Shown: positions 20,885 through 37,500 of the stretch, one piece after another
How the letters are laid out: the number at the start of each line of letters is the position of its first letter
Numbering within the stretch: position 1 is the stretch's first letter
Origin: Macrostomum hystrix
Lineage: Eukaryota; Animalia; Platyhelminthes
Direction: 5' to 3'
Assembly (NCBI GenBank): GCA_950097015.1
Contig: CATNEN010000039.1
Coordinates: 2,728,001 to 2,792,000 of the forward strand
DNA: 64,000 bases
The notes under the pieces: generated by a model
The model's input: the letters and a program-made list of their open reading frames with translations, nothing else
Told to the model about the DNA's origin: nothing
Databases searched by the model: none
Program-made: the position numbers and the translations under genes

Positions 20885-21993
20885 CTATTCGTGGTCAGAG
20901 TCGCCAGCCGCAGCGGAAGGGAAAGTGTGCAGCTCCTCCTGCAGCAGCTCAAGCAGTGGCTCAAACAGTTTTGAGTACCCCAGCTCAGTGAGGTTGCAGT
21001 AGTCGTACATGTCCCGGTGGGACAGGCTCTGGTCCGGCTGCAGGAAGGTGTCCCAGTCGGGGATGAGCACGGTGGTGCGAGCCAGCTGGCCCAGCTGCTC
21101 AGCCAGGAGGCGGTTCACCTCGGCGTGCTTGGCACGGCGGGGATTCTTGCGCTCGCCAACAGGCAGCAGGCCGAGCACAATGACGCTGGCGCCTGGCAGG
21201 TGCCGGTGCACCGCCTCAGTCAGGTTGCGAATGCCTGCGGAGGGAGAGCGGGCGGCGGGTGAGGCAGATGCAGGAGCAGGCGGGGCAGATGCAGGAGCAG
21301 GCGGGGCAGATAGAGGAATAGGCGGGGCAGATAGAGGAGCAGACGGGGCAGATGGAGGAGTAGGCGGGGCAGATGGAGGAGTAGGCGGGGCAGATGAAGG
21401 AGTAGGCGGGGCAGATGGAGGAGTAGGGGGCAGATAGAGAAATAGGCGGGGCAGATGGAGGAGTAGGCGGGGCAGATAGAGGAGTAGACAGGGCAGATAG
21501 AGGAGTAGGCGGAGCAGATGGAGGAATAGGCGGGGCAGAAGGAGGAGTAGGCGGGTCAGATAGAGGAGTAGACGGGGCAGATAGAGGAGTAGGCGGGGCA
21601 GATGTATGGGCAGGTAGGGGCAGATGGGTAAGGTGGCAGTGCCTCACCGCCATAGATGTCGGAGGCCAGCTCAGGGTTGTTGTTTCCAGCGTGCAGCACG
21701 ACAACCTTAGGCGAGCAGTCCTCCAGCTCTCCATCCTCGATGCGCCACAGAATGTTCTCGATGCGGTCCTCGTAGATGCCGAAGTTCAAGCAGTGCAGCG
21801 GCTCGATGTGGTCCTGCCAGGTGGAGGTGAACTGCATGCGCTGCACGATGTTGTCCCCGATAAAGATGACATCGGGCTCGCGGTCCACGGCCTTCTCGCG
21901 GAATCGTTTGTGCTGACTGAGCCAGCGACCGTCGCCAAGAACATCGACTGGAACAGTCGGATTCAACACGCTGCTGCTCACGCCTGAGTAAGC
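20885..21993 (-). CDS. PAFAH1B2/3: Platelet-activating factor acetylhydrolase Ib alpha-subunit homolog (SGNH fold), catalytic Ser and His replaced; no genomic ATG found
   Basis: Exons 21993-21648 and 21234-20885. Motifs DVLGDGRWLSQH, EPDVIFIGDNIV, PLHCLNFGI, ILWRIEDGELE, PKVVVLHAGNNN, LGLLPVGE.KNP.R, SHRDMYDYCNLTELGY align with the PAFAH1B2/B3 family. Confidence 0.9.
21260..21612. repeat. 21-bp G-rich minisatellite in the PAFAH1B intron
   Basis: Unit gcagatggaggagtaggcggg. Confidence 0.92.
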
Positions 21994-22127
21994 CTGAAGT
22001 GAACACGTAATATTCGAACGTTTTTACTACGCTACTGTCAGTAGAAATGCCAGCATTTTTGTCCTTGGTGGTCTAAAATCTTAATAAATTTGGGAACTAT
22101 GAAAACATATATTTATTAATATTAATA

Positions 22128-23130
22128 CTCTAGCCAATAATTGGGTAATATTCTAGCTTACAACTGGGTAAAATTCGAAACTACAATTGGGTAATATTCT
22201 AGCCTACAACTGGGTAATATTCTAGCCTAAAATTAGGTAATATTCTAGCCTACAACTGGGTAATATTCTAGCTCACAACTTGGTAATATTCTAGCCTACA
22301 ACTGGGTAATATTCTAGCTCACAACTGGGTAATATTCTAGCCTACAACTGGGTAATATTCTAGCCTACAACTGGGTAATATTCTAGCCTACAACTGGGTA
22401 ATATTCTAGCCTACAACTGGGTAATATTCTAGCCTACAACTGGGTAATATTCTAGCCTACAACTGGGTAATATTCTAGCCTACAACTGGGTAATATTCTA
22501 GCCTACAACTGGGTAATATTCTAGCCTACAACTGGGTAATATTCTAGCCTACAACTGGGTAATATTCTAGCCTACAACTGGGTAATATTCTAGCCTACAA
22601 CTGGGTAATATTCTAGCCTACAACTGGGTAATATTCTAGCCTACAACTGGGTAATATTCTAGCCTACAACTGGGTAATATTCTAGCCTACAACTGGGTAA
22701 TATTCTAGCCTACAACTGGGTAATATTCTAGCCTACAACTGGGTAATATTCTAGCCTACAACTGGGTAATATTCTAGCCTACAACTGGGTAATATTCTAG
22801 CCTACAACTGGGTAATATTCTAGCCTACAACTGGGTAATATTCTAGCCTACAACTGGGTAATATTCTAGCCTACAACTGGGTAATATTCTAGCCTACAAC
22901 TGGGTAATATTCTAGCCTACAACTGGGTAATATTCTAGCCTACAACTGGGTAATATTCTAGCCTACAACTGGGTAATATTCTAGCCTACAACTGGGTAAT
23001 ATTCTAGCCTACAACTGGGTAATATTCTAGCCTACAACTGGGTAATATTCTAGCCTACAACTGGGTAATATTCTAGCCTACAACTGGGTAATATTCTAGC
23101 CTACAACTGGGTAATATTCTAGCTCACAAT
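22128..23130. repeat. 23-bp minisatellite, highly homogeneous
   Basis: Unit gggtaatattctagcctacaact, about 43 copies. Confidence 0.97.
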
Positions 23131-23505
23131 TTACTAATATGCGATCCTGCATTTGCATAATGCTCTATATTAAAACGTGGCAACATTATGTTTAAGCTTG
23201 TCTTACAGTGGCATAAAAATGATCAGTAAACAAAAATGCTGCAAAAAAACAAACTGTAGAAATAAAAAAATGGAAAGTATATAATGCTTTTGGCTCAACT
23301 TTATACAAAGATAAATAGACTATTGAAATTATACTATCACAGACAGCTTTTGCATTTATTTGATTAAATATAAAATCTATGGAAAAAGTAGAAAACGTTC
23401 TCTTAGTTCTCTTTAATAGACGATTTGAGAAGCCAGTTGAAATTAAAGCTTACTTAAATTCCTAATGATATCAGTTTTCCCAAAAAAGGCTGCGACAAAA
23501 GAGGG

Positions 23506-24486
23506 CTGTGACCTGTACAGTAGCCCCAGTCTTTCTACTGAATTTACCTGTGACCTGTACGGTAGCCCCAGTCTTTCTACTGTTTACCTGTGACCTGTAC
23601 AGTAGCCTCAGTCTTTCTACTGTTTACCTGTGACCTGTACAGTAGCCTCAGTCTTTCTACTGTTTACCTGTGACCTGTACAGTAGCCTCAGTCTTTCTAC
23701 TGAATTTACCTGTGACCTGTACGGTAGCCCCAGTCTTTCTACTGTTTACCTGTGACCTGTACAGTAGCCTCAGTCTTTCTACTGTTTACCTGTGACCTGT
23801 ACGGTAGCCCCAGTCTTTCTACTGTTTACCTGTGACCTGTACGGTAGCCCCAGTCTTTCTACTGAATTTACCTGTGACCTGTACGGTAGCCTCAGTCTTT
23901 CTACTGTTTACCTGTGACCTGTACAGTAGCCTCAGTCTTTCTACTGAATTTACCTGTGACCTGTACGGTAGCCCCAGTCTTTCTACTGAATTTACCTGTG
24001 ACCTGTACGGTAGCCTCAGTCTTTCTACTGTTTACCTGTGACCTGTACAGTAGCCTCAGTCTTTCTACTGAATTTACCTGTGACCTGTACAGTAGCCTCA
24101 GTCTTTCTACTGTTTACCTGTGACCTGTACAGTAGCCTCAGTCTTTCTACTGAATTTACCTGTGACCTGTACAGTAGCCTCAGTCTTTCTACTGTTTACC
24201 TGTGACCTGTACAGTAGCCTCAGTCTTTCTACTGTTTACCTGTGACCTGTACAGTAGCCTCAGTCTTTCTACTGTTTACCTGTGACCTGTACAGTAGCCT
24301 CAGTCTTTCTACTGTTTACCTGTGACCTGTACAGTAGCCTCAGTCTTTCTACTGTTTACCTGTGACCTGTACAGTAGCCTCAGTCTTTTTACTGTTTACC
24401 TGTGACCTGTACGGTAGCCTCAGTCTTTCTACTGTTTACCTGTGACCTGTACAGTAGCCCTAGTCTTTCTATTGTTTACCTGTGAC
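23506..24486. repeat. 40/43-bp minisatellite
   Basis: Unit tgtgacctgtacagtagcctcagtctttctactg(aat)tttacc. Confidence 0.96.
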
Positions 24487-24500
24487 CGTGAAACGTAACG

Positions 24501-25328
24501 CTGTGACCGTTTATGTTTATGAAACTGGGATCACCATGTAACCGTTAACTGTGACCGTTTATGTTTAAGAAACTGGGATCACCATGTAACCGTTAACTGT
24601 GACCGTTTATGTTTATGAAACTGGGATCACCATATTACTGTTAACTGTGACCGTTTATGTTTATGAAACTGGGATCACCATGTAACCGTTAACTGTGACC
24701 GTTTATGTTTATGAAACTGGGATCACCATATAACTGTTAACTGTGACCGTTTATGTTTATGAAACTGGGATCACCATGTAACCGTTAACTGTGACCGTTT
24801 ATGTTTATGAAACTGGGATCACCATGTAACCGTTAACTGTGACCGTTTATGTTTATGAAACTGGGATCACCATGTAAACGTTAACTGTGACCGTTTATGT
24901 TTCTGAAACTTGGATCACCATATAACTGTTAACTGTGACCGTTTATGTTTAAGAAACTGGGATCACCATGTAACCGTTAACTGTGACCGTTTATGTTTAT
25001 GAAACTGGGATCACCATATTACTGTTAACTGTGACCGTTTATGTTTATGAAACTGGGATCACCATGTAACCGTTAACTGTGACCGTTTATGTTTATGAAA
25101 CTGGGATCACCATATAACTGTTAACTGTGACCGTTTATGTTTATGAAACTGGGATCACCATGTAACCGTTAACTGTGACCGTTTATGTTTATGAAACTGG
25201 GATCACCATGTAACCGTTAACTGTGACCGTTTATGTTTATGAAACTGGGATCACCATGTAACCGTTAACTGTGACCGTTTATGTTTAAGAAACTGGGATC
25301 ACCATGTAACCGTTAACTGTGACCGTTT
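24501..25328. repeat. 48-bp minisatellite
   Basis: Unit ctgtgaccgtttatgtttatgaaactgggatcaccatgtaaccgttaa. Confidence 0.96.
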
Positions 25329-25816
25329 GCGTGACCTTTATGATTCTTACGGCCGATGGCTGAAGTGTAACATTTACTACTAAAATGTGAAGTTTATGAT
25401 TTCTGCTCAATGCATCTATCCATGTATCCGTATCGCTATTTCTGAAACTGCCTATTTGTGTCTAATGTGTTGTGTTGTAATGTTTAATGTGTGTGCATGT
25501 TTATTTAAGTGTATTCTATATACTGACAACCAATTTTATGTACCAGAAAGAGACACATGACTTCGAAAAAAACGGTCACAAAAATGGCCACATCAATCAG
25601 TCTCCCAATGACCTTGACTAATGGTCATAAAAATGGCCACATCAATCAGTCACCCAATGACCTTGACTAATGGTCACAAAAATGGCCACCAACAGTAACA
25701 TGGGACCATAACAGTCGTATCAACGCTCACAAGCGCTTTTTGCGACCGTTTAATACGGTAAATTATCAAAACTATGCGATCCTCATAACAACAGACTGTT
25801 GTCATTAGCAACGGCG

Positions 25817-28800
25817 CTAATCTCCGCCAGCCTGATTGCCGGCCTCTCTACGAAGGAATTCGCGAGACTGAAAATCGGCTAGCCTGGTGGGTTCCGGGAT
25901 CCGGTAGCGGCAGCAGAGCCCCACTAGCCAGACGGCGGTTGGCAGCGAGATCAGGTGGCCGCAGCTCACGTACACCGGGTTCTTCACCGACTTGCTGGGC
26001 AGGTGGGCGCAGCCAATCACAGCGCCGCTATCGCCGCGGATGTAGTAGTCTCTGGGGGGATATACGGTAAGATGAAAATGAATTAGGGACAGCTGAGAAG
26101 CCAGGAGTTCTAAGTGAAGTGTAAATCAAAGCATGACTTTAAAGTCGTGCTAATTGAATAAGCATTATAATACTAGTAATAACAATACGGTTGTGTGCGG
26201 CTGTTCAGTCCATGGACTGGGAAAATGCCACACCCACCCTTAACTCTTGCTAAAAAATATACAATTTTTTTCAGTGGTGTGCGAATCGAATCCCCGACCT
26301 TTAAGCTGTGAGTCCAACGCTTTAATCACTAGGCAACAATGCATCATAAGCATGTATTGTGATTAAACATACAACTCAATGATGCTCAATGTACTGCGCT
26401 CATTTATTGGCTAGGGCCCAGGAATTAGATAAAAAACACAAGAGAAGTTTTGCAAAGAATTTCTGGGTTAGTCAAATAGGAGACAGAGAGACTTTACACA
26501 TAGAAAATTTGAATAACTCTCTGCGTACGCACAATTAAGACTACTCATAGCAGTAAGAATAGAATGAGCAGCATAGAACAGGAGGACCTTTTTCTGGCGT
26601 CTTAAACGTTAAAAATTTAATCTACGCCATTGAGGGCCAACCTCCAAGGCACAGTGAGAGTGTACACCGCCTGACGATGAAAAATTCAGGGCAGATATAC
26701 ACACCTGTGTGAGTGTGTGCCTGCGTACAGTATATGTGTGCGTGTATGCTCAGGTGTCAGCGAAACGGGCAGAATTGCCTCCTCGCTGGCTGCAGGTCCA
26801 GTGTCACCAAATGATGTGCCATTGCCCGCAGCCCAACACAGACCCAATAAAACACTGCAAGGTAGGCACTCACCGGGCGCCAGACTCCATAACCAGCTGC
26901 CTGACCCGCCTCTGATCCAGACCGTCCACGTGAAAGAAGCTCTTGGCCGCGCCGATTGTGGGCAGGTCGGCCAGGACGCCAACGTGGCAGGCCAGGCCGA
27001 AGCCGCGGGGGTGAAGCGTCCCGTTGCCGTCTAGCAGCAGCGCCTGCGGCGTCAGCTCCGGCCTGTTGGCCCGCAGCTCGTCCAGCATCTCCAGAACTGG
27101 CGGAGCCTCGCGGAAGCTTAGGAAGCCCGGCACATAGGGATGCGACACACGGACCCGGCGGCAGGCCTGCGTAGCGCCGCATGTTTTAAATATAGCTGCG
27201 TAACTACTGAAGACACACCCGCTCCTTCAGTGTCTCAGCCATTGTCACACCCGCACCTGTCTCAGCCATTGTCACACCCGCACCTTCCGTGTCTCAGACA
27301 TTGCCACACCTTCCGTGTCTCAGACATTGTCACACCCGCACCTTTAGTGTCTCAGACATTGTCACACCCGCACCTTTAGTGTCTCAGACATTGTCACACC
27401 CGCACCTTTAGTGTCTCAGACATTGTCACACCCGCACCTTTAGTGTCTCAGACATTGTCACACCCGCACCTTTAGTGTCTCAGACATTGTCACACCCGCA
27501 CCTTTAGTGTCTCAGACATTGTCACACCCGCACCTTTAGTGTCTCAGACATTGTCAAACCCGCACCTTTAGTGTCTCAGACATTGTCACACCCGCACCTT
27601 CAGTGTCTCAAACATTGTCACACCCGCACCTTCCGTGTCTCAGACATTGTCACACCCGCACCTTCAGTGTCTCAAACATTGTCACACCCGCACCTTCCGT
27701 GTCTCAGACATTGTCACACCCGCACCTTCAGTGTCTCAGACATTGCCACACCTTCCGTGTCTCAGACATTGTCACACCCGCACCTTCAGTGTCTCAGACA
27801 TTGCCACACCTTCCGTGTCTCAGACATTGTCACACCCGCACCTTCCATGTCTCAGACATTGCCACACCTTCCGTGTCTCAGACATTGTCACACCCGCACC
27901 TTTAGTGTCTCAGCCATTGTCACACCCGCACCTGTCTCAGCCATTGTCACACCCGCACCTTCCGTGTCTCAGACATTGCCACACCTTCCGTGTCTCAGAC
28001 ATTGTCACACCCGCACCTTTAGTGTCTCAGACATTGTCACACCCGCACCTTTAGTGTCTCAGACATTGTCACACCCGCACCTTTAGTGTCTCAGACATTG
28101 TCACACCCGCACCTTTAGTGTCTCAGACATTGTCACACCCGCACCTTTAGTGTCTCAGACATTGTCACACCCGCACCTTTAGTGTCTCAGACATTGTCAC
28201 ACCCGCACCTTTAGTGTCTCAGACATTGTCAAACCCGCACCTTTAGTGTCTCAGACATTGTCACACCCGCACCTTCAGTGTCTCAAACATTGTCACACCC
28301 GCACCTTCCGTGTCTCAGACATTGTCACACCCGCACCTTCAGTGTCTCAAACATTGTCACACCCGCACCTTCCGTGTCTCAGACATTGTCACACCCGCAC
28401 CTTCCGTGTCTCAGACATTGCCACACCTTCCGTGTCTCAGACATTGTCACACCCGCACCTTCAGTGTCTCAGACATTGCCACACCTTCCGTGTCTCAGAC
28501 ATTGTCACACCCGCACCTTCCATGTCTCAGACATTGCCACACCTTCCGTGTCTCAGACATTGTCACACCCGCACCTTTAGTGTCTCAGACATTGTCACAC
28601 CCGCACCTTCAGTGTCTCAAACATTGTCACACCCGCACCTTCCGTGTCTCAGACATTGCCACACCTTCCGTGTCTCAGACATTGTCACACCCGCACCTTT
28701 AGTGTCTCAGACATTGTCACACCTTCCGTGTCTCAGACATTGTCACACCCGCACCTTCAGTGTCTCAGACATTGTCACACCCGCACCTTCAGTGTCTCAG

Positions 28801-29536
28801 ACATTGTCACACCCGCACCTTCAGTGTCTCAGACATTGTCACACCCGCACCTTCAGTGTCTCAGACATTGTCACACCCGCACCTTCAGTGTCTCAGACAT
28901 TGTCACACCCGCACCTTTAGTGTCTCAGACATTGTCACACCCGCACCTTCAGTGTCTCAGACATTGTCACACCCGCACCTTCAGTGTCTCAGACATTGTC
29001 ACACCCGCACCTTCAGTGTCTCAGACATTGTCACACCCGCACCTTCAGTGTCTCAACCAGCCTTCGGAATACATGATAAAAAGAGCAGGCGGGTGCGCAG
29101 TGGCTGGCAGGCCTGACCTGGTACACGGGATTGAGGTCGGGCAGCTGCAGCACAACCAGGCTTGCACAGGCCGTCTCTGAGTCGCCCTTGACGAATGACA
29201 GATCGGCGCCAGCCACCAATCGCAGGCAGTGCTGGGGGCCGTAGGGACAAGGCGAGCCGGGACTGGAGTTTGAGCTGCTGGCCTGGCAGTCGGTCACTAG
29301 GCGTCTAGCCTGTTGCCAAGGCAACTGGTCTGTCAACTGTAGCCGCTTCTTCAATGTCAGCTGCACCCTTTTGAAGTGTAAAGGAGAACAGACACAGCAA
29401 TAAAGTAAACAATACATATTCTTTCTAAATCCTTATTGATGTTGCTGCTAAAAGACAGCTACACTTACTCAATCCATTCTTTGTTCTGCTCTGGTTCTAG
29501 CTCTTCACTTTCCTTGTCCTTTGACTTACAGCTGGC
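25817..29536 (-). CDS. ENDOV: Endonuclease V (inosine-specific ribonuclease); no genomic ATG found
   Basis: Exons 29536-29469, 29367-29118, 27166-26874, 26051-25817 (GT-AG, phases 2/0/2). Motifs VAGADLSF, PYVPGFLSFRE, LLDGNGTLHPRGFGLACHVGV, PTIGAAK, NPVYVSCGH, YRIPEPTRLAD. All four acidic catalytic residues are present. Confidence 0.92.
26274..26342 (-). other. tRNA-like/SINE head in the last ENDOV intron
   Basis: Minus strand gcattgttgcctagtgattaaagcgttggactcacagcttaaaggtcggggattcgattcgc: A-box and B-box-like motifs, no good cloverleaf. Confidence 0.5.
26620..26845 (+). mobile_element. SINE copy lacking its head (same family as 5640-5985)
   Basis: aacctccaaggcacagtg...cacacctgtgtgagtgtgtgcctgcgtacagtat...gctggctgcaggtccagtgtcaccaaatgatgtgccattgcccgcagccc. 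Confidence 0.72.
27215..29055. repeat. 32-bp minisatellite filling ENDOV intron 2
   Basis: Unit gtgtctcagacattgtcacacccgcaccttta with shorter variants; contains a 675-bp higher-order duplication. Confidence 0.96.
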
Positions 29537-30354
29537 CTGAAATTATTGATTGGTTCTTTAGTTCTGTGATTCAAATTCACATGACAATAATGTATAAACA
29601 GCAACAAAAATAAGTGAAAGAAAAGACAATTATCCTTTCTTATAATGAAATAGCTGGTATAGAGTATAAAAATTATTTGGGAGAAAAGTATAATATAGTA
29701 AAAATAAAACTTTAGTAATTTATTTTTCTTATGTTACACATAAATTTAGCTTTAATTTGCAACTTTTTAATTACAAACATGCATATATAAAGACTTGACA
29801 GGGAAATTAAAACTAATTCATGCATATCAAAATTTAAGTTATATAGGCCTAATGACATTACATAAGTGTCAACTTCTTTAACATCAGAACTTCAAACTAA
29901 GGCCTAAAAAAACAGGTGACAAATTGGCCTAATATAGATTATAAGGACAATAATAAAAGGGTACAGATCAAATCGTCCTATTCTAAAGTGTCATATGATG
30001 ATGACGATTTGCACAAAAGTGTCACAATATTCAATTTAATATGACAATCTTGACTATTTTTTCATTGCTCATTTTAATTATGAATGTGATTTGAATATTT
30101 GATGATGCATAATTCAAACAATTAATTGATTTAAAGGCAGTTAAACATAAAGGGCTTATTTCTAAAAAGCTACATTTAATCTATGGCTTTTTATAATTAA
30201 TTAGGACCAAGCTAGAATTGTAGGCCTATATAAATATTATTTATGCCTTACTTCAGTAATACATAATGGGAGAGCTTAAGTTAGGTAAATAAAAAGGCAA
30301 AGAACAAATTTCATCTTTGTTACATTACATTGAATTATACCAAAGGCAAAGTAC

Positions 30355-30525
30355 TGACTCCTGAGCACACAGACATATAAGCATACAGATAGGCCATACC
30401 AATGTGAGAATGACTCAAAATAGTGAGTCTCAAAATAGGTAAGTACATCTGCTTTGAATTTCTCATCAGCACCATCAGCACCAGGATGTGTACATTCTCA
30501 GTGCCTTGGACAGGAGGTTGGTGCG
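30355..30525 (-). mobile_element. Diverged SINE fragment (same family)
   Basis: ctgactcctgagcacac...tacatctgctttgaatttctcatc...gtgccttgga...ggaggttgg. Confidence 0.55.
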
Positions 30526-31019
30526 AGTGCGAGCGAAGAAAGTTTGTTTCTTTCTTTCAAGGCTGTGTTAAAAAAACAATAATTTAGACCCAGAGACTTA
30601 ATACAGTTATATTGCAAGCAGAGTAAAAGTAATTGAAATTCCATTTTTCAAACCATGCACTACGGCCATACCAGTGTAAGTCAGTAAGTGCGTAATCGAT
30701 CGTCAATGGCGAGCGACAGCGTGAAATTTCATATTCCCAACAAATGAAACAAATCATATTCCCAATTATAAAATAAATCATCGCATTTCCAGGAAATTAG
30801 TGTGAGAAGAAAAACAAAGTTTATTCCAGACTTTATTTTCATAAAAATATATCAATCTGCGAAGTTCTAATATTTTATGTCTTTCTAATACTGTAACAAG
30901 ATAGTCAAAAAAATAAAGTAATATTAAGAGATGAAATTAAAAACATCTCAGTAAATCTAAACAAATGTGACATAACTCTATCAAGAAGACATATGAACTG
31001 TTTATATCCAACATCAGGA

Positions 31020-31750
31020 CAGAAGGCGGTCAGGAAATCTAGCTGCTCGCGATTGGCCTCGCCTGTGCGGTACCTGCATCTTGAGCTGCAGCACGTCGTG
31101 TTGAGGCTCATGGGGCCGGATGCAGCGGGCCTCCGACCGGATGACGTGCATGGCCAGCCAGTCGTATAGTTATCGCTCTCGCAGCAGGTCATAAGGCCGC
31201 GTGAGGCGCGCCCTTAAGTAGACCACGGCATTGGTCTCGCTGCTTGGGCCTGCATGCGCAGCGTCCAGCTGCCTCTCCAAAGCTGGACCGTCAAGGTCCA
31301 GGTCTCGGCGTTAAATAACAGCAAGACAGTCTCAACGACTACTTGAAACAGCCGAGCCCTGAGCCCGTCGTCTATGGCCTCAGATTGGAGTATGGTGCGC
31401 ACAGATTAGTGAAACGCGGCTCAGGCCATGGTCCTCTTCGCCTCAACAGGTCGTAAAGCGACGTCCGGCACGATGGCACCTCCAGGGAGGCGTACATCGT
31501 CCATCACGCGGGCCACCTCAGTGAGGGACCCTCGTGACTCGCAGTGCCTCCATAGCCACCTCCTCCCCGAGGGCGCGACCTCCCGGCGCCGTCCTGTGTC
31601 ACAATTGACGCCTCCTGCAGCATCACAATTAATTGCACTGGACGCGCCGCGGTGCATGGAGACTTCGTTTGCCTCACCGGTTGCTTTTTCCGCCGCTGTT
31701 AGCAGCCGCAGCATCCGCTTTAACAGAGCGCGGCTCACAGCTCTTAGCTA
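31020..31750 (-). mobile_element. Degraded RTE-like LINE 3' fragment
   Basis: GC-rich island encoding LRARLFQVVVETVLLLFNAETWTLT, similar to the post-RT motif (LF...VESVLLYG.ETWTL) of RTE-clade LINEs, with stops and frameshifts. Confidence 0.65.
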
Positions 31751-32745
31751 GGCAAGTGCCAGCATGATGGTCAGTCTCACCCGGAGGTCGCCGCATATTT
31801 GTACCGGAGTGCAAATTTAACAGAACGAACACGTACAATTGCACAAAAACATATTTTGTGAGCATAATAATTAAGCATCAATTCGCCCAAATTTTTCTTT
31901 ATCCTCCATTGCAGTTTAGCTTTTTTAGCACGCACAGTTTACACTCAGTTGTTGAAAATTATCCATGCATGACAATGACAATCCATGACGCTTAACGATT
32001 CTAAGCTTTTTCATTTACTCTTGGTGAGGAAAAAGAACTATCAAAAGAATTTTCAATATCATTTTCAACAGAATTTTATCTTGAAACTGGTGTGCAATGG
32101 ACGCTTTGATTAATGACTTTTTGACAAACATTTTTAAACATAATTAATCTTTTGCTTTAAATTTTTGCTTTTTCCGGTTATAAATAGTTAAAACAAAGGA
32201 CTTAAATTAGAGGAATAACTAAATTTAAAAAATTGCACGCTTATAAAAAGAATAATTTTTATATGTGCTTTTTCTACCAAAAAGCTAGTAAATTATCAAG
32301 CGCAACGAAAACGTTCGTGGAATATGCGGATTTCTAATTTACTAATTCCTGTGTTTATATGCATAATAACCCGTGTTAAACCCCCGCCCCCTACTCTAGA
32401 GGCATATCGTGTCATTGTCATTATGTCATGTTCTGTAGCTTGTCTGGAATATTTTTTATATATAATCTTGACGCTTTCGCATTTTGCGCTTAATAATTTT
32501 GTTAGATTATCTATTATTAGCTCATATATTTTCTTGTCAATAAAAGTTGAACTCATTCACAGCTTATTATTGAACTCGTTATATAATAGCATTGTAACAT
32601 TGTAACATGTTTAACATTGTTTCCTTCATAAAAAATCAGTTTACCTCGAATATTATTCATAGGTTTTATTTATTCTTAGTACTAAATATATCACTTATAA
32701 AATATTGATACAGTTATTGAATGGTTATGCACATTAATGGAACTA

Positions 32746-33015: not shown

Positions 33016-34536
33016 GAATTCCAGGCATTTCGGCGACAGTTAATTTCGGCGACATGAAAAATGGTGACTTCGGCGACAAGCAATGTTAAATTCGGTGAAA
33101 TTATTATTATATTCTTACTAACAAAACCAATGCGTCTACATCCTACCGTAACCGCCTACAGCCTACAAAATACTTTCCCTTTTTGTTAAATGTAACGAAC
33201 ACGTGTGCTCTGACAAGCCATCCTGTGACGTGCTGATTGTTTGTCGGGATAAGAAGCTTGATAAATATCCGCACTCTGACGTACCCACCAACCTGAAGAG
33301 ACCGACCAAGTGTGTGAGCGAGCCCCATCACCAAGGCAGCTTCGTCACAGTACGATCTGCAACTCCGATCCTATGAGAACATTTACATGTACTGTGGTTT
33401 TCGCGTTTATTGAATCAAAATTTCAATTTTATCATATAGCCACATTTTAAATACCATGCATGCAAATACAAATGTTTCACGTAATTTGTTGTAAAGTGTA
33501 GTGCGTGGCTGTACCACGAAGCTACAATTCACAAAGTTAAAATACTCGAAGTTAAAAGTTAGCATAAGATTCACACCAAAAGAACGAACAGCATTGCATT
33601 ATGTTAAAAGCATCAAAGGGCGTTTAGCCGTGGAACATTTAGCCGACTGCAGGCTTCCAGCAGTGCCTCCTCAGATCGCAGTCCTTCAGAAAATTCTGGG
33701 GCGGTCGGCAGCTCTATGGCGGTCGGCAGCTCTGCGGCAGTCGGCAGCTCTGCGGCAGTCTGTAGCTCTGGGGCGGTCGGCAGCTCTATGGCGGTCGGCT
33801 GCTCTGCGGTGGTCGGCAGCTCTGCGGCAGCCGGCAGCTCGGTGCCGTCTGTACCGCCTGCTGTAATGTCGACTGTGCTGGTGTCGGCTGCTGTTCTGCC
33901 TTCGTCTGCTGCGCCAGCTGGGGCACTGGTTTCACTCATAGAAATGTCATCGAGATCGGTTGTATCACAGCTGGGACATTTCCATTGAAACGACTTCTGC
34001 ATTTTCATACGCTTATACTGCGCCAGAGAAATGGCTGCATTTCCAGTCAAGCAAGTTCGGTGATGCCAAAAGTTGCATCCATCACACAGGACTCCCTGTT
34101 GACGCTCTCGGACTCTAAACCTGCACAATGTGCATACTTCCATGACAACTACAGTTGACTAAAAGTGTCAGCGCTTTTTGAAATATATAACTTATACTCA
34201 GCGGGTGTGTGGGGTGGACGATGGGCTATGGCGCCATAGTACACCATAATTTTCATGCTACTGTCAGGTAGCTTCAGTCTCCTTCACTTCTCTGGTTTCG
34301 CGGTCGGGGGTGGGTGAGTCATTCATTCGCGCGGCTTTTGGGTCTACGGTTTTTAATGAAAATTGCATTGACTTTGACTTGGATTGAGTTAGAACGCTCT
34401 TGGAAACACACAGTTGTACTCAGACAATAAGCATCGTTGACAAAACGTACTTGTCGCCGAATTTAACATTGCTTGTCGCCGAAGTCACCATTTTTCATGT
34501 CGCCGAAATCAACTGTCGCCGAAAAGCCTGGCACCC
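33016..34536. mobile_element. Non-autonomous TIR element with sub-repeated TIRs, nested in the hAT transposase
   Basis: About 85-bp inverted repeats built from ttcggcgaca motifs (33016-33098 / 34453-34536). 8-bp TSD gttggtgt (33008-33015, 34537-34544). Confidence 0.88.
33613..34143 (-). CDS. PHD-finger ORF with 18-bp (ELPTAA) repeats inside the TIR element
   Basis: C4HC3 pattern CTLC...CDGC..WHHRTC...WKCPSC with an ATG start. Expression unknown. Confidence 0.6.
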   Translation of the reverse strand: MEVCTLCRFRVRERQQGVLCDGCNFWHHRTCLTGNAAISLAQYKRMKMQKSFQWKCPSCDTTDLDDISMSETSAPAGAADEGRTAADTSTVDITAGGTDGTELPAAAELPTTAEQPTAIELPTAPELQTAAELPTAAELPTAIELPTAPEFSEGLRSEEALLEACSRLNVPRLNAL

Positions 34537-37500
34537 GTTGGTGTAGTCATGAGGCATCAAGTGACAAGATCACTGGCAAAGTGATAGAGAATGGCAGTTA
34601 GACCGGAGTCTTCAGAGACAACTGGACCTCCTCCTGCAGCTCTCAGAAGCACAGACTCAATCTGACAAGCCAGTTGCATCCCAGGCTTGTCAAATCGTTG
34701 GTCAATAGCTGAGACAGCAATGTCCAGTAACTCGAAATACTGCTTCTTGTAGTACTCCATTGCTGTGAGCTGAGCTGGCTGTCTACCATCCCTATTGGAA
34801 TAAATCTCAAAAACCAGTGGACACACGACATGGGTGTCAAAAATGTGGCTCCAAAGTGTGATGCAACACAAAATGCTATAATAACCTAACCAACTAACTA
34901 CACTTTATAAAAAAGAAAAGTTTGTGCACTGTGGTGCGACGCCCTAGCAATGTCCTACAATGCAATGCAACATCAAAAAAGTCTGAAAATGCGACAAACA
35001 GTTGGACGCAATTTTTCAACTTATTCCAATAGGGGCTGTCATCATCAAAATGCTGTGGACATCATCGGGCTCTTGGAACCTTTGGATCATCAAGTCCGCA
35101 TGACTTAGCTTCATTGATTGTGGACACATATAGTCATAATTGTTAAGGATACTAGAAATTGTTGCGGCTTGAGGCTAGATGTGTCTGGAAATGAAAAACA
35201 GATTATCATTCAGCAAGGCAACTTTTTGAAAAAGTACACAAGGTCTTAAGCAATGGCTAGCGCATTTCACACAATTGTAACTGATGATATAGCTTCCTGA
35301 ACTACCAAATTCATGGAATAGGCCGTGCAGTGCACAAATATGGCCCTTGGCTCAATCTACTGAATGCGCTTGGCAACTCCACTGATAGAGCCAGCCATAG
35401 GCGAGCAACCATCATATCCTTGACCTCAAATGCAATGGTTATCCAAAGAAAGCCTTGAGAGGGCATCTAGCAGTAGTCTGGAAATTCCTGTAGCAGAGGT
35501 ATCTGAAACTTCATAAAAGCCCACAAAGTCTTCTTACACATTAAACTGACCGTCATCCTATCTCAATGCACATCTGCTGCTTACCTTTGCAATCTGTAGT
35601 CTCATCCGCAAGTACAGCATAGAACTTGGCAACTTTGATGAGTTGGATCAGTGTTCGCAGCACTTGGTTGCTCATCAGCTTGAGTATCTCATTTTGAATG
35701 TCATGACTCAAATATTTACATCGATGAGATCCCTGCAGGAAGGCTAGAAGCTTGCTATCATCAGTAGTCCATAGTCTAAGAAGCTGCACAAGGTTGCCTC
35801 ACCCAATCCATGGCCTCTCACACTCAGACCCTGTTTGCCTAAAAACTGAAGTGATGTCACAACTGGATGAAGACCCTTTTGGTTTGTCACCTGGTCTTGG
35901 TTCTTCTGCTGGACAAGTTGAGAGTCAATGGTTTGTTCCTTTGTATAGTGGACCCACTTCTCCATTGCCTCTCAGTGCTGAGTCAAGTTTTGATGAGTAG
36001 TGAAGTCCCTGCTCATGTCTTTCCAATTCTGGAACCCATTGACACAGAAAGCCTGCTCGGGCCTTGAGCAAAATCTTAGCAATCCAAGAGTGTGAGCATC
36101 GTGGCAGTGTTGGCAAAAAACTGACTGCTTTTCTTCATCCCAATGAAGCCAGGGAAATTTCTTGAAGTTAGAATGTTGAAAACTATGGTTCTTCTTCCCA
36201 AAAGTCTTCATTGGAAATCTCTTTTTTGGTTGGCTTGGAGCAAAAACTAGCACTGGATTAGACTTATGTTTGACAACAGGCTCATTGCCAGCTGTAATTA
36301 AAGAAACATCAGGAGTAGACTCTGATGAAGCCATGTCTTTGCTCAGACTCCTGTCCATTATGTGTGTCCAAAGAGATGTCTTATTTATGCATATGCCTGT
36401 GCAGACGAGGCAAAAGTTGAAATGTTCCCTGTTTGCTTTTCACTTTGGATGAAAATAGGGAATTTGTGCCATAATATGTATGCTACATATTGCCTGGGGT
36501 TGTAGAATGTGGGAGGCAAATTTTAGAATTAAAGCCCAGTAAGAGCACAAGCACATTGTGCATGTACATGAATGACCACACTATACTATACTGTGTACAA
36601 ATGTACATACAACAATCCAACCCTCATTCCCCCATGACCCCCTGTGCTAGCACTGGGGGAGAGAGATTCTTCTAATGGAAAGGGCCAAGGGGTGGGTTAG
36701 AGTTGCGTAAGGCAGACCTATGCTTTGAGGAGTAAAGCTAAGCAGACTATGAACACTATGAATGGATAATAAGTTGGGGTGGGACAAGAAGCACTAAATG
36801 TGACAAATGACTACAACTATTTGCTTATTTCTATTGTTTCAAGGCCAAATAAAAAATACCATTAAAACATAAAATGTAACAGTTTTTGTGCATGCTAAAG
36901 TTGGAGGGCACTTTGTATTGAGTGCCACACCTACTAAATTTCAGGGGGCATGTGCCCCTTGTGCTGCAGGCTTCCGCCGCCCTTGGCTACACCATGTCCA
37001 TCTATCTATCCATCTATTTTATATATCTATAAGGTTTTATTATAGATATATAGCAACATGGGCTCTTTTCCATATTTATAAACTACTTTTCTATCTACTG
37101 CAATATGCTTATTATTGCTAATTAGCATCCATTATTATTTGAAATATACTGTACTATATGGGAAACAAAACACTCTTTATAATTATATATGCATTCAATA
37201 ACTTGATATCTAATTCTAAGTGCCTAAGTGGCTATACTTATGAATTACTGCTTATTTATACTTATTCTTTATATCCAGTCTACAAGGCTTCTAGTGAATC
37301 AGACTCCAAAATCCTAAGGGTAATTGATAAAACACAACATATATTTGAAATACTATAATTGTATATATAGTACACTAGTATATGGTATATAGTATATAGT
37401 ATACAGTATATAGTAGTATGTAGTTGTATACACAGTTGTATATTATTGTTTAATAACAAAATCAAGTAATGGTCCTAGGGCTAGGCCTACTAGTAAATTT

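What the first reader, a model, noticed from the sequence alone, without database searches (positions are those of the whole stretch)
20885..29540. Two adjacent ATG-less genes (ENDOV then PAFAH1B): candidate operon whose start codons come from a trans-spliced leader
Seen: the ENDOV coding frame starts at aatttcag|GCC AGC TGT AAG (29536), with an in-frame TAA three codons upstream. The PAFAH1B frame starts at acttcag|GCT TAC TCA GGC GTG (21993), again with an in-frame TAA upstream and no ATG. Both acceptors are phase 0 and are followed by G (Ala codon). Both proteins are already about full length relative to their families. The genes are co-oriented and separated mostly by minisatellites. Established: flatworm spliced leaders end in AUG, and that AUG can act as the initiator Met. 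Inference: SL trans-splicing resolves a polycistronic transcript and creates MASCKSK... and MAYSGVSS..., each with a +4 G. Translation would then depend on trans-splicing.
Basis: partly seen in the sequence, partly recalled or inferred. Interest (0 to 1): 0.85.

Follow-up and report, generated by a model that had tools for sequence, protein, structure and literature searches.

The report
Start codons donated by spliced leader
Two neighbouring genes of the flatworm Macrostomum hystrix (ENDOV and a PAFAH1B-alpha-like gene) have no start codon of their own; RNA shows for ENDOV, and sequence suggests for the other, that the AUG ending the trans-spliced leader supplies it, a mechanism known in flatworms since 2006, and the proposed operon is unproven.

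Summary
On the minus strand, ENDOV (4 exons, 29536-25817) and a PAFAH1B-alpha-like gene (2 exons, 21993-20885) each begin in phase 0 right after a TTTCAG/CTTCAG acceptor. Each has an in-frame TAA upstream, no usable ATG, and a complete N-terminus compared with homologues.

The genome is Macrostomum hystrix. Its spliced-leader (SL) RNA genes end ...TTGCATG|GTAAG.

For ENDOV the claim is shown. Spliced RNA contigs from two studies carry 13-22 nt of the SL, ending in ATG, joined exactly in front of GCC at 29536. No upstream exon was seen.

For PAFAH1B the claim is only inferred. Support comes from the acceptor motif, the absence of any ATG exon with a consensus donor in the spacer, and three M. 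lignano orthologue models that all lack a Met.

The operon is not shown. The distance from the ENDOV poly(A) site to the PAFAH1B acceptor is about 3.5 kb, of which 81% is three locus-private minisatellites. The remaining ~660 nt passes a lax published criterion (<1 kb after removing repeats) and fails a strict one (<=300 bp).

The mechanism has been published since 2006. This scan already found it on other DNA of this genome (RINT1, NDUFA5). This is a new member of a known kind, of low interest.

The parts
29537..29542 (-). ENDOV SL acceptor TTTCAG; the AG is at 29538-29537
   Evidence: RNA contigs of X1, X4 and X5 fit the genome up to 29537 and then continue with SL letters.
29543..29545 (-). 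In-frame TAA three codons upstream of the first ENDOV codon
   Evidence: read directly.
29469..29536 (-). ENDOV exon 1 (68 nt, starts GCC AGC, no ATG)
   Evidence: The intron-1 joint 29366/29468 is present in four runs.
29118..29367 (-). ENDOV exon 2 (holds the catalytic Asp motif GADLSF)
   Evidence: The loose end at 29117 equals the start of exon 3.
27214..29055 (.). 32-bp minisatellite (about 60 copies) inside ENDOV intron 2, private to this locus
26874..27166 (-). ENDOV exon 3
   Evidence: (Endonuclease_5, E 6e-31), (junction letters).
25817..26051 (-). ENDOV exon 4 with stop TAG at 25819-25817
25468..25816 (-). ENDOV 3' UTR, inferred. ATTAAA lies at 25488-25483, and the X5 contig length puts the 3' end near 25468.
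   Evidence: This is length arithmetic on the contigs, not an alignment.
24501..25328 (.). 48-bp minisatellite in the spacer, private to this locus
23506..24487 (.). 40-bp minisatellite in the spacer, private to this locus
23124..23505 (-). 382-nt AT-rich unique island in the spacer. It could hold a promoter for PAFAH1B (untested).
22123..23123 (.). 23-bp minisatellite in the spacer, private to this locus
21994..22122 (-). 129-nt unique sequence just upstream of the PAFAH1B acceptor (proximal outron). It holds the in-frame TAA at 22026-22024 and the acceptor CTTCAG.
21648..21993 (-). PAFAH1B-alpha-like exon 1 (starts GCT TAC, no ATG; FIGDN in place of FIGDS)
21263..21627 (.). 21-bp minisatellite inside the PAFAH1B intron
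20885..21234 (-). PAFAH1B-alpha-like exon 2 with stop TAG at 20887-20885 (DYCN in place of DYLH)

Best explanation
Both genes are ordinary SL-trans-spliced flatworm genes whose coding sequence begins directly at the trans-splice acceptor.

The pre-mRNA 5' part (the outron) is removed. The ~43-nt Macrostomum spliced leader, whose last three bases are AUG, is joined in phase 0 to GCC (ENDOV, 29536) or GCT (PAFAH1B-like, 21993). The SL AUG then becomes the initiator, giving M-A-S-C-K... and M-A-Y-S-G... . Without trans-splicing neither mRNA has a productive start codon.

Shown: the SL gene and its AUG|GU end; the SL-to-ENDOV junction in RNA; the ENDOV exon structure.

Inferred: the SL junction at PAFAH1B; actual initiation at the SL AUG for both genes.

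Whether the two genes share one promoter is open. I lean (about 65:35) towards two transcription units, or at least no demonstrated operon.
For: SL RNA genes:
- At least 20 exact copies of ...GCGAAGACTCAATTTATTGCATG|GT lie in 11.6-kb-spaced arrays.
- The gene reads SL-ATG|GTAAG. It folds into three hairpins with a single-stranded AUAUUUUUAG Sm-like site, z = -4.4.
- It is identical to the published M. hystrix SL (Wiberg 2023 Table S3). The assembly size and contig count match that paper.

ENDOV:
- Contigs in X1 (study P1) and in X4 and X5 (study P2) end at 29537. They continue with letters that, reverse-complemented, read GCGAAGACTCAATTTATTGCAT. With the G at 29537 this gives ...TTGCATG|GCCAGC.
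- The same contigs carry the intron-1 joint and the exon 2 to exon 3 junction.
- No contig lies upstream, and no cis joint enters 29536.

PAFAH1B:
- The acceptor CTTCAG fits the SL-acceptor motif.
- There is a stop 10 codons upstream.
- No ATG-started phase-0 exon with a GTRAG donor exists anywhere in the spacer.
- All three M. lignano orthologue models lack a Met. Two start with Ala, and NCBI marks one as partial.
- Both genes matched only one place in the assembly.

Literature: all flatworm SLs end in AUG, and it can act as initiator (Cheng et al. 2006, cited).
Against: The M. lignano N-terminus is 7 residues longer and poorly conserved. The orthologue models show 'no Met', not 'same acceptor'.

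Contigs drop rare isoforms, so a minor cis-spliced ENDOV form cannot be excluded.

No protein-level evidence exists that translation starts at the SL AUG. Its -3 position is U, a weak context that is only partly offset by the +4 G.
Confidence: 0.8

Rival explanations
1. True operon. One promoter upstream of ENDOV drives a bicistronic precursor that runs through ~3.5 kb of minisatellite-filled spacer. 3' end formation of ENDOV and SL trans-splicing at 21993 then resolve it.
For: The genes are co-oriented, with no obvious gene between them in the six-frame scan and tandem-repeat map.

The upstream gene is shown to be SL-spliced and the downstream one probably is.

After removing tandem arrays the spacer is ~660 nt. 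That is under the 1-kb repeat-adjusted threshold by which Ustyantsev & Berezikov 2021 assign M. lignano operons, and they argue that repeats inflate operon spacers.

The arrays are private to this locus, so they expanded in place.

RNA runs X4-X7 hold about twice as many words of the region as mature exons can explain.
Against: The raw distance of ~3.47 kb is far from the ~100-nt mode and fails the <=300-bp criterion of Calvelo et al. 2025. At 660 nt the pair sits near the trough between the two modes.

About 60% of SL-spliced M. lignano genes are not in operons.

By their lengths, the ENDOV contigs stop near a poly(A) signal.

The excess of RNA words can be explained by the ENDOV intron-2 array alone.

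An AT-rich 382-nt island could hold an internal promoter.
Confidence: 0.35
2. PAFAH1B gets its ATG from an unrecognised cis-spliced 5' exon in the spacer, with its own promoter, and is not trans-spliced.
For: The junction at 21993 was not checked in RNA. In parasitic flatworms many acceptors are shared between cis- and trans-splicing. There are 43 ATG-started phase-0 candidates with any GT donor in the spacer.
Against: None of the 43 candidates has a GTRAG donor. Three M. lignano transcript- or genome-based models found no such exon and are Met-less. The acceptor fits the SL motif.
Confidence: 0.1
3. Translation starts at a non-AUG codon or at an internal AUG on transcripts that are not trans-spliced.
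For: Near-cognate ATT and ACG codons lie in frame between the TAA and 21993.
Against: ENDOV mature RNA carries the SL. Internal Mets would remove the ENDOV catalytic Asp and the conserved PAFAH1B N-terminal blocks. The first downstream AUG in ENDOV exon 1 is out of frame.
Confidence: 0.03

Closest known systems
SL 3'-terminal AUG used as initiator Met in flatworms (Schistosoma mansoni; Cheng, Cohen, Ndegwa & Davis, J Biol Chem 2006; cited in PMC12582326)
   Same: The SL ends in AUG and is joined in frame directly to the coding sequence. The gene has no ATG of its own.
   Different: Different species and genes. Only the RNA junction is shown here (ENDOV); translation is not.
Macrostomum lignano / M. 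hystrix SL trans-splicing (Wudarski 2017 PMC5730564; Ustyantsev & Berezikov 2021 PMC8629364; Wiberg 2023 PMC10468722)
   Same: The same SL sequence and the same acceptor motif [T/C]TNCAG. Wiberg et al. already note that the SL's final ATG is a likely start codon.
   Different: Those papers give genome-wide counts. ENDOV and PAFAH1B are not singled out in the text I could search.
M. lignano operons defined by repeat-adjusted spacing <1 kb (PMC8629364)
   Same: A co-oriented pair in which the downstream gene is probably SL-spliced. The spacer is mostly repeats and is ~660 nt after subtraction.
   Different: That definition is a heuristic. No precursor RNA is shown here, and the spacing is far from the 100-nt mode.
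Earlier cases of this scan in the same genome (RINT1 s1-351212, NDUFA5 s1-408140)
   Same: ATG-less first coding exon, with the SL AUG joined in front of the first codon in RNA.
   Different: Other loci. Here two such genes are neighbours.
C. elegans SL2 operons
   Same: Polycistron resolution by SL trans-splicing is the proposed logic.
   Different: Nematode SLs do not end in AUG. Spacers are ~100 nt and a dedicated SL2 exists. Macrostomum has one SL.

Membership tests
Flatworm genes with SL-donated initiator AUG | The organism has an SL RNA whose exon ends in AUG, followed by a GU donor and an Sm-type site | tested here: met
   It matches the published M. hystrix SL.
Flatworm genes with SL-donated initiator AUG | SL joined to the gene's first coding exon in mature RNA: ENDOV | tested here: met
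   There are 13-22 SL letters plus the shared G in front of GCC at 29536, in X1, X4 and X5 (two studies).
Flatworm genes with SL-donated initiator AUG | SL joined to the gene's first coding exon in mature RNA: PAFAH1B-like | not tested
The only indirect support is the Met-less M. lignano models.
Flatworm genes with SL-donated initiator AUG | SL AUG in frame with the ORF, no stop between, and no genomic in-frame ATG upstream of the conserved domains | tested here: met
   for both genes.
Flatworm genes with SL-donated initiator AUG | The protein actually starts at the SL-encoded Met | not testable with these tools
   Needs N-terminal proteomics or ribosome profiling.
SL-resolved operon | Adjacent co-oriented genes with nothing on the other strand between them | tested here: met
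   The spacer is arrays plus 663 nt of unique, non-coding-looking sequence.
SL-resolved operon | Short intercistronic distance | tested here: inconclusive
   Raw distance is ~3,474 nt, which fails <=300 bp. Repeat-adjusted distance is ~663 nt, which passes <1 kb.
SL-resolved operon | A precursor RNA spanning both cistrons, with no internal promoter | not tested
No 5'-end data are on hand.
Endonuclease V (Pfam PF04493) | Domain match and catalytic motifs | tested here: met
   (E 6e-31, 1e-12, 5e-05 on three exons). GADLSF, FRE, LDGNG and CGH were read.
PAF acetylhydrolase Ib alpha subunit (SGNH hydrolase) | Sequence homology over the full length | tested here: met
   60% and 39% identity to an oyster PAFAH1B protein on the two exons.
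PAF acetylhydrolase Ib alpha subunit (SGNH hydrolase) | Catalytic Ser-Asp-His triad | tested here: not met
   GDS is GDN and DxxH is DYCN. The M. lignano models show the same. It is a homologue, probably not an active esterase.

The most novel reading that the evidence does not exclude
ENDOV and PAFAH1B-like form a genuine two-gene operon. Its precursor is transcribed through a 3.5-kb intercistronic spacer that is 81% locus-private, recently expanded minisatellites, and both cistrons depend on the SL for their start codon. This would show that flatworm operons tolerate kilobase repeat expansion between the poly(A) site and the trans-splice acceptor.
Probability: 0.3. Interest if true: 0.4.

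Novelty: new member of a known kind. Interest (0 to 1): 0.22.

Why it matters
The main value is for annotation. Pipelines that trim the SL or insist on a genomic ATG will call such genes partial, as happened to all three M. lignano PAFAH1B-like models. They may also pick a wrong internal Met.

Biologically it adds two housekeeping genes whose translation is strictly tied to trans-splicing. It also offers a convenient locus to test how far apart operon cistrons can drift when minisatellites expand between them.

Tried and rejected
Synteny could not be checked.
- Search for an M. lignano ENDOV. The search for homologous proteins with the exon-2 open segment gave nothing. That says little, because a full-length protein lies outside the length window. 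The search of protein representatives with exon 3 gave no hit above 62% identity, so no close Macrostomum representative was found.
- Supplements of three Macrostomum papers searched for Mlig016102, ENDOV and PAFAH1B: nothing.
- The 'g3' in the M. lignano name Mlig016102g3 is not evidence of an operon. The prefix groups near-identical transcripts.
- Genomic SL look-alikes followed by ATG-GC... were checked as possible retrocopies of these two genes. They belong to SL-bearing repeat families instead.
- Pfam on open frames around the pair found only a PHD finger at 33616-34158. No third cistron was identified.
- I did not send the spacer or any stretch with kilobase arrays to read laying, because the tool says it turns long repeats away.
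- Joined spliced protein models were not sent to any search tool. They were built only inside a local script to check frame, stops and length. All searches were made exon by exon by reference.
Full report
What is there.

Both genes lie on the minus strand. ENDOV has four exons: 29536-29469, 29367-29118, 27166-26874 and 26051-25817. All have GT..AG borders, and together they encode 281 codons before the stop. Pfam Endonuclease_5 matches exons 2, 3 and 4.

The second gene has two exons, 21993-21648 and 21234-20885, with 231 codons. Its nearest relatives are proteins that their sources name platelet-activating factor acetylhydrolase IB alpha/beta subunits.

ENDOV reads tttcag|GCC AGC TGT AAG at 29536, with TAA at 29545-29543. 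The second gene reads cttcag|GCT TAC TCA GGC GTG at 21993, with TAA at 22026-22024.

Neither frame has an ATG before conserved, functionally needed sequence. The first in-frame Met of ENDOV lies after the catalytic Asp. That of the PAFAH1B-like gene lies after the GDGRW and FIGDN blocks. Alignment offsets to full-length homologues differ by only 2 and 5 residues, so only the Met is missing. Each gene matched only one place in the assembly.

The joined protein models were used only in a local script for frame and length. All searches were made exon by exon by reference.

Whose genome.

The assembly has 220,453,370 bases in 42 contigs. This matches the published Macrostomum hystrix assembly (Wiberg et al. 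2023) and the earlier notes of this scan.

The last 23 bases of the M. lignano leader plus GT (sequence taken from PMC8629364) occur at least 20 times exactly, in arrays spaced 11.6 kb apart. One copy reads ...CCGTAAAGACGGTCTCTTACTGCGAAGACTCAATTTATTGCATG|GTAAG. It folds into three hairpins with a single-stranded U-rich Sm-like site (z = -4.4). It equals the M. hystrix SL in Wiberg's Table S3. So the organism trans-splices, and its leader ends in AUG.

RNA evidence.

The two acceptors are 7.5 kb apart and separated by kilobase arrays. I chose the repeat-free stretch 29060-32000 around ENDOV, because ENDOV had no other line of evidence.

Contigs of four runs from two studies lie on exons 1 and 2. 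All carry the intron-1 joint, and those that reach the exon 2 end (X2, X4, X5) carry the exon 2 to exon 3 junction, so these runs contain spliced RNA.

In X1, X4 and X5 the contig fits the genome up to 29537 and then continues with 13-22 letters. Reverse-complemented, they read GCGAAGACTCAATTTATTGCAT. With the shared G at 29537 the RNA reads ...TTGCATG|GCCAGC. This is the leader's AUG placed directly and in frame before the first ENDOV codon.

No contig covers 29555-32000, apart from two short repeat scraps at 30001-30141 in X5. No cis joint enters 29536. ENDOV is therefore shown to be an SL-AUG gene at the RNA level.

From the contig lengths (1,219 nt in X5 and 1,271 nt in X4), the mRNA continues about 349-401 nt past the stop. 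For X5 this ends near 25468, about 15 nt after an ATTAAA at 25488-25483. This is arithmetic, not an alignment.

PAFAH1B-like gene.

Its junction was not tested in RNA. Four things support the same mechanism:
- The acceptor CTTCAG fits the [T/C]TNCAG motif enriched at M. lignano SL acceptors.
- There is an upstream in-frame stop.
- A scan of the whole spacer found 43 ATG-started phase-0 exon candidates with any GT donor, and none with a GTRAG donor.
- All three M. lignano orthologue models (90% identical in exon 1) lack a Met. Two start with Ala, and one is flagged 'partial' by NCBI.

The M. lignano N-terminus is 7 residues longer and diverged. These models therefore show that the orthologue is also ATG-less, not that the acceptor is the same one. 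I put the SL-AUG reading for this gene at about 0.85-0.9.

Operon.

The distance from the inferred ENDOV 3' end (~25468) to the acceptor at 21993 is ~3,474 nt. Three arrays fill 2,811 nt of it: a 48-mer, a 40-mer and a 23-mer. That leaves ~663 nt of unique sequence.

Ustyantsev & Berezikov (2021) subtract repeats and call M. lignano pairs operons below 1 kb when the second gene is SL-spliced. They find a mode near 100 nt. By that rule this pair would qualify, but near the trough between the two modes. By the <=300-bp raw rule of Calvelo et al. 2025 it fails.

About 60% of SL-spliced M. lignano genes are outside operons. M. hystrix is gene-dense, so a few hundred unique bases between neighbours is not unusual.

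All four large arrays of the locus are private to it: whole-genome pattern searches hit nowhere else. They therefore expanded in place. That fits the idea that repeats inflate an older, shorter spacer, but it does not show co-transcription.

One lead remains open. RNA runs X4-X7 hold 39-43% of the sampled words of 20885-29540, while mature exons plus the 3' UTR can give only about 20%. Some non-exonic, locus-private sequence is therefore in the RNA contigs. The ENDOV intron-2 array alone (21% of the stretch) would explain it, and high-copy arrays amplify traces of pre-mRNA or DNA. It cannot be counted as evidence for read-through.

I put the operon at about 0.35.

Comparison and novelty.

The mechanism is the one described by Cheng et al. 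2006 for Schistosoma (cited). Wiberg et al. explicitly mention it for Macrostomum. This scan had already confirmed it on other DNA of the same genome, for RINT1 and NDUFA5.

The present case adds two genes, one of them confirmed, and a borderline operon candidate. It is a new member of a known kind, ordinary for this genome.

Limits.

No M. lignano ENDOV was found. There are no protein-level data.

Noticed in passing
window 22123-23123, 23506-24487, 24501-25328, 27214-29055: All four kilobase minisatellites of this locus (23-, 40-, 48- and 32-bp units, 89-96% matches between copies) occur nowhere else in the 220-Mb assembly. They arose by local amplification, not by spread of a repeat family.
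   Followed up: yes
whole window 1-64000: At least 26 distinct tandem arrays with TRF score >=300 cover about 17.9 kb, or 28% of the window. Many sit in introns and between genes, so a minisatellite-filled spacer is normal here.
   Followed up: partly
window 21648-21993 and 20885-21234 (minus strand): The only PAFAH1B-alpha-like gene found in the genome has Asn in place of the catalytic Ser (FIGDN) and Asn in place of the catalytic His (DYCN). All three M. lignano models show the same. It is probably a non-catalytic pseudoenzyme conserved in the genus.
   Followed up: partly
window 20885-29540, runs X4-X7: Four RNA runs hold 39-43% of the sampled 31-mers of the region, about twice the exonic share. 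Non-exonic, locus-private sequence (an intron or spacer array) is therefore present in the RNA contigs. Which part it is could not be resolved.
   Followed up: no
G000 C7:8556416, C7:8561404, C24:365104, C38:27887531, C8:629353 (loci L007-L009, L011, L015): A dispersed repeat family begins with a near-complete SL ending in ATG, followed by GCTTCAACTCGCTTCGCTTCGTAAATCG. It looks like the SL-bearing retroelement copies noted earlier in this scan.
   Followed up: partly
window 27167-27195 (minus strand): The ENDOV intron-2 acceptor (ggcgctacgcag|GCC) has almost no polypyrimidine tract, yet RNA contigs show that it is the one used.
   Followed up: partly
window 33616-34158 and 35975-36439 (minus strand): Open frames with a PHD finger and a Cys/His-rich block of unknown type lie 4-7 kb upstream of ENDOV on the same strand. 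They were not characterised further.
   Followed up: no
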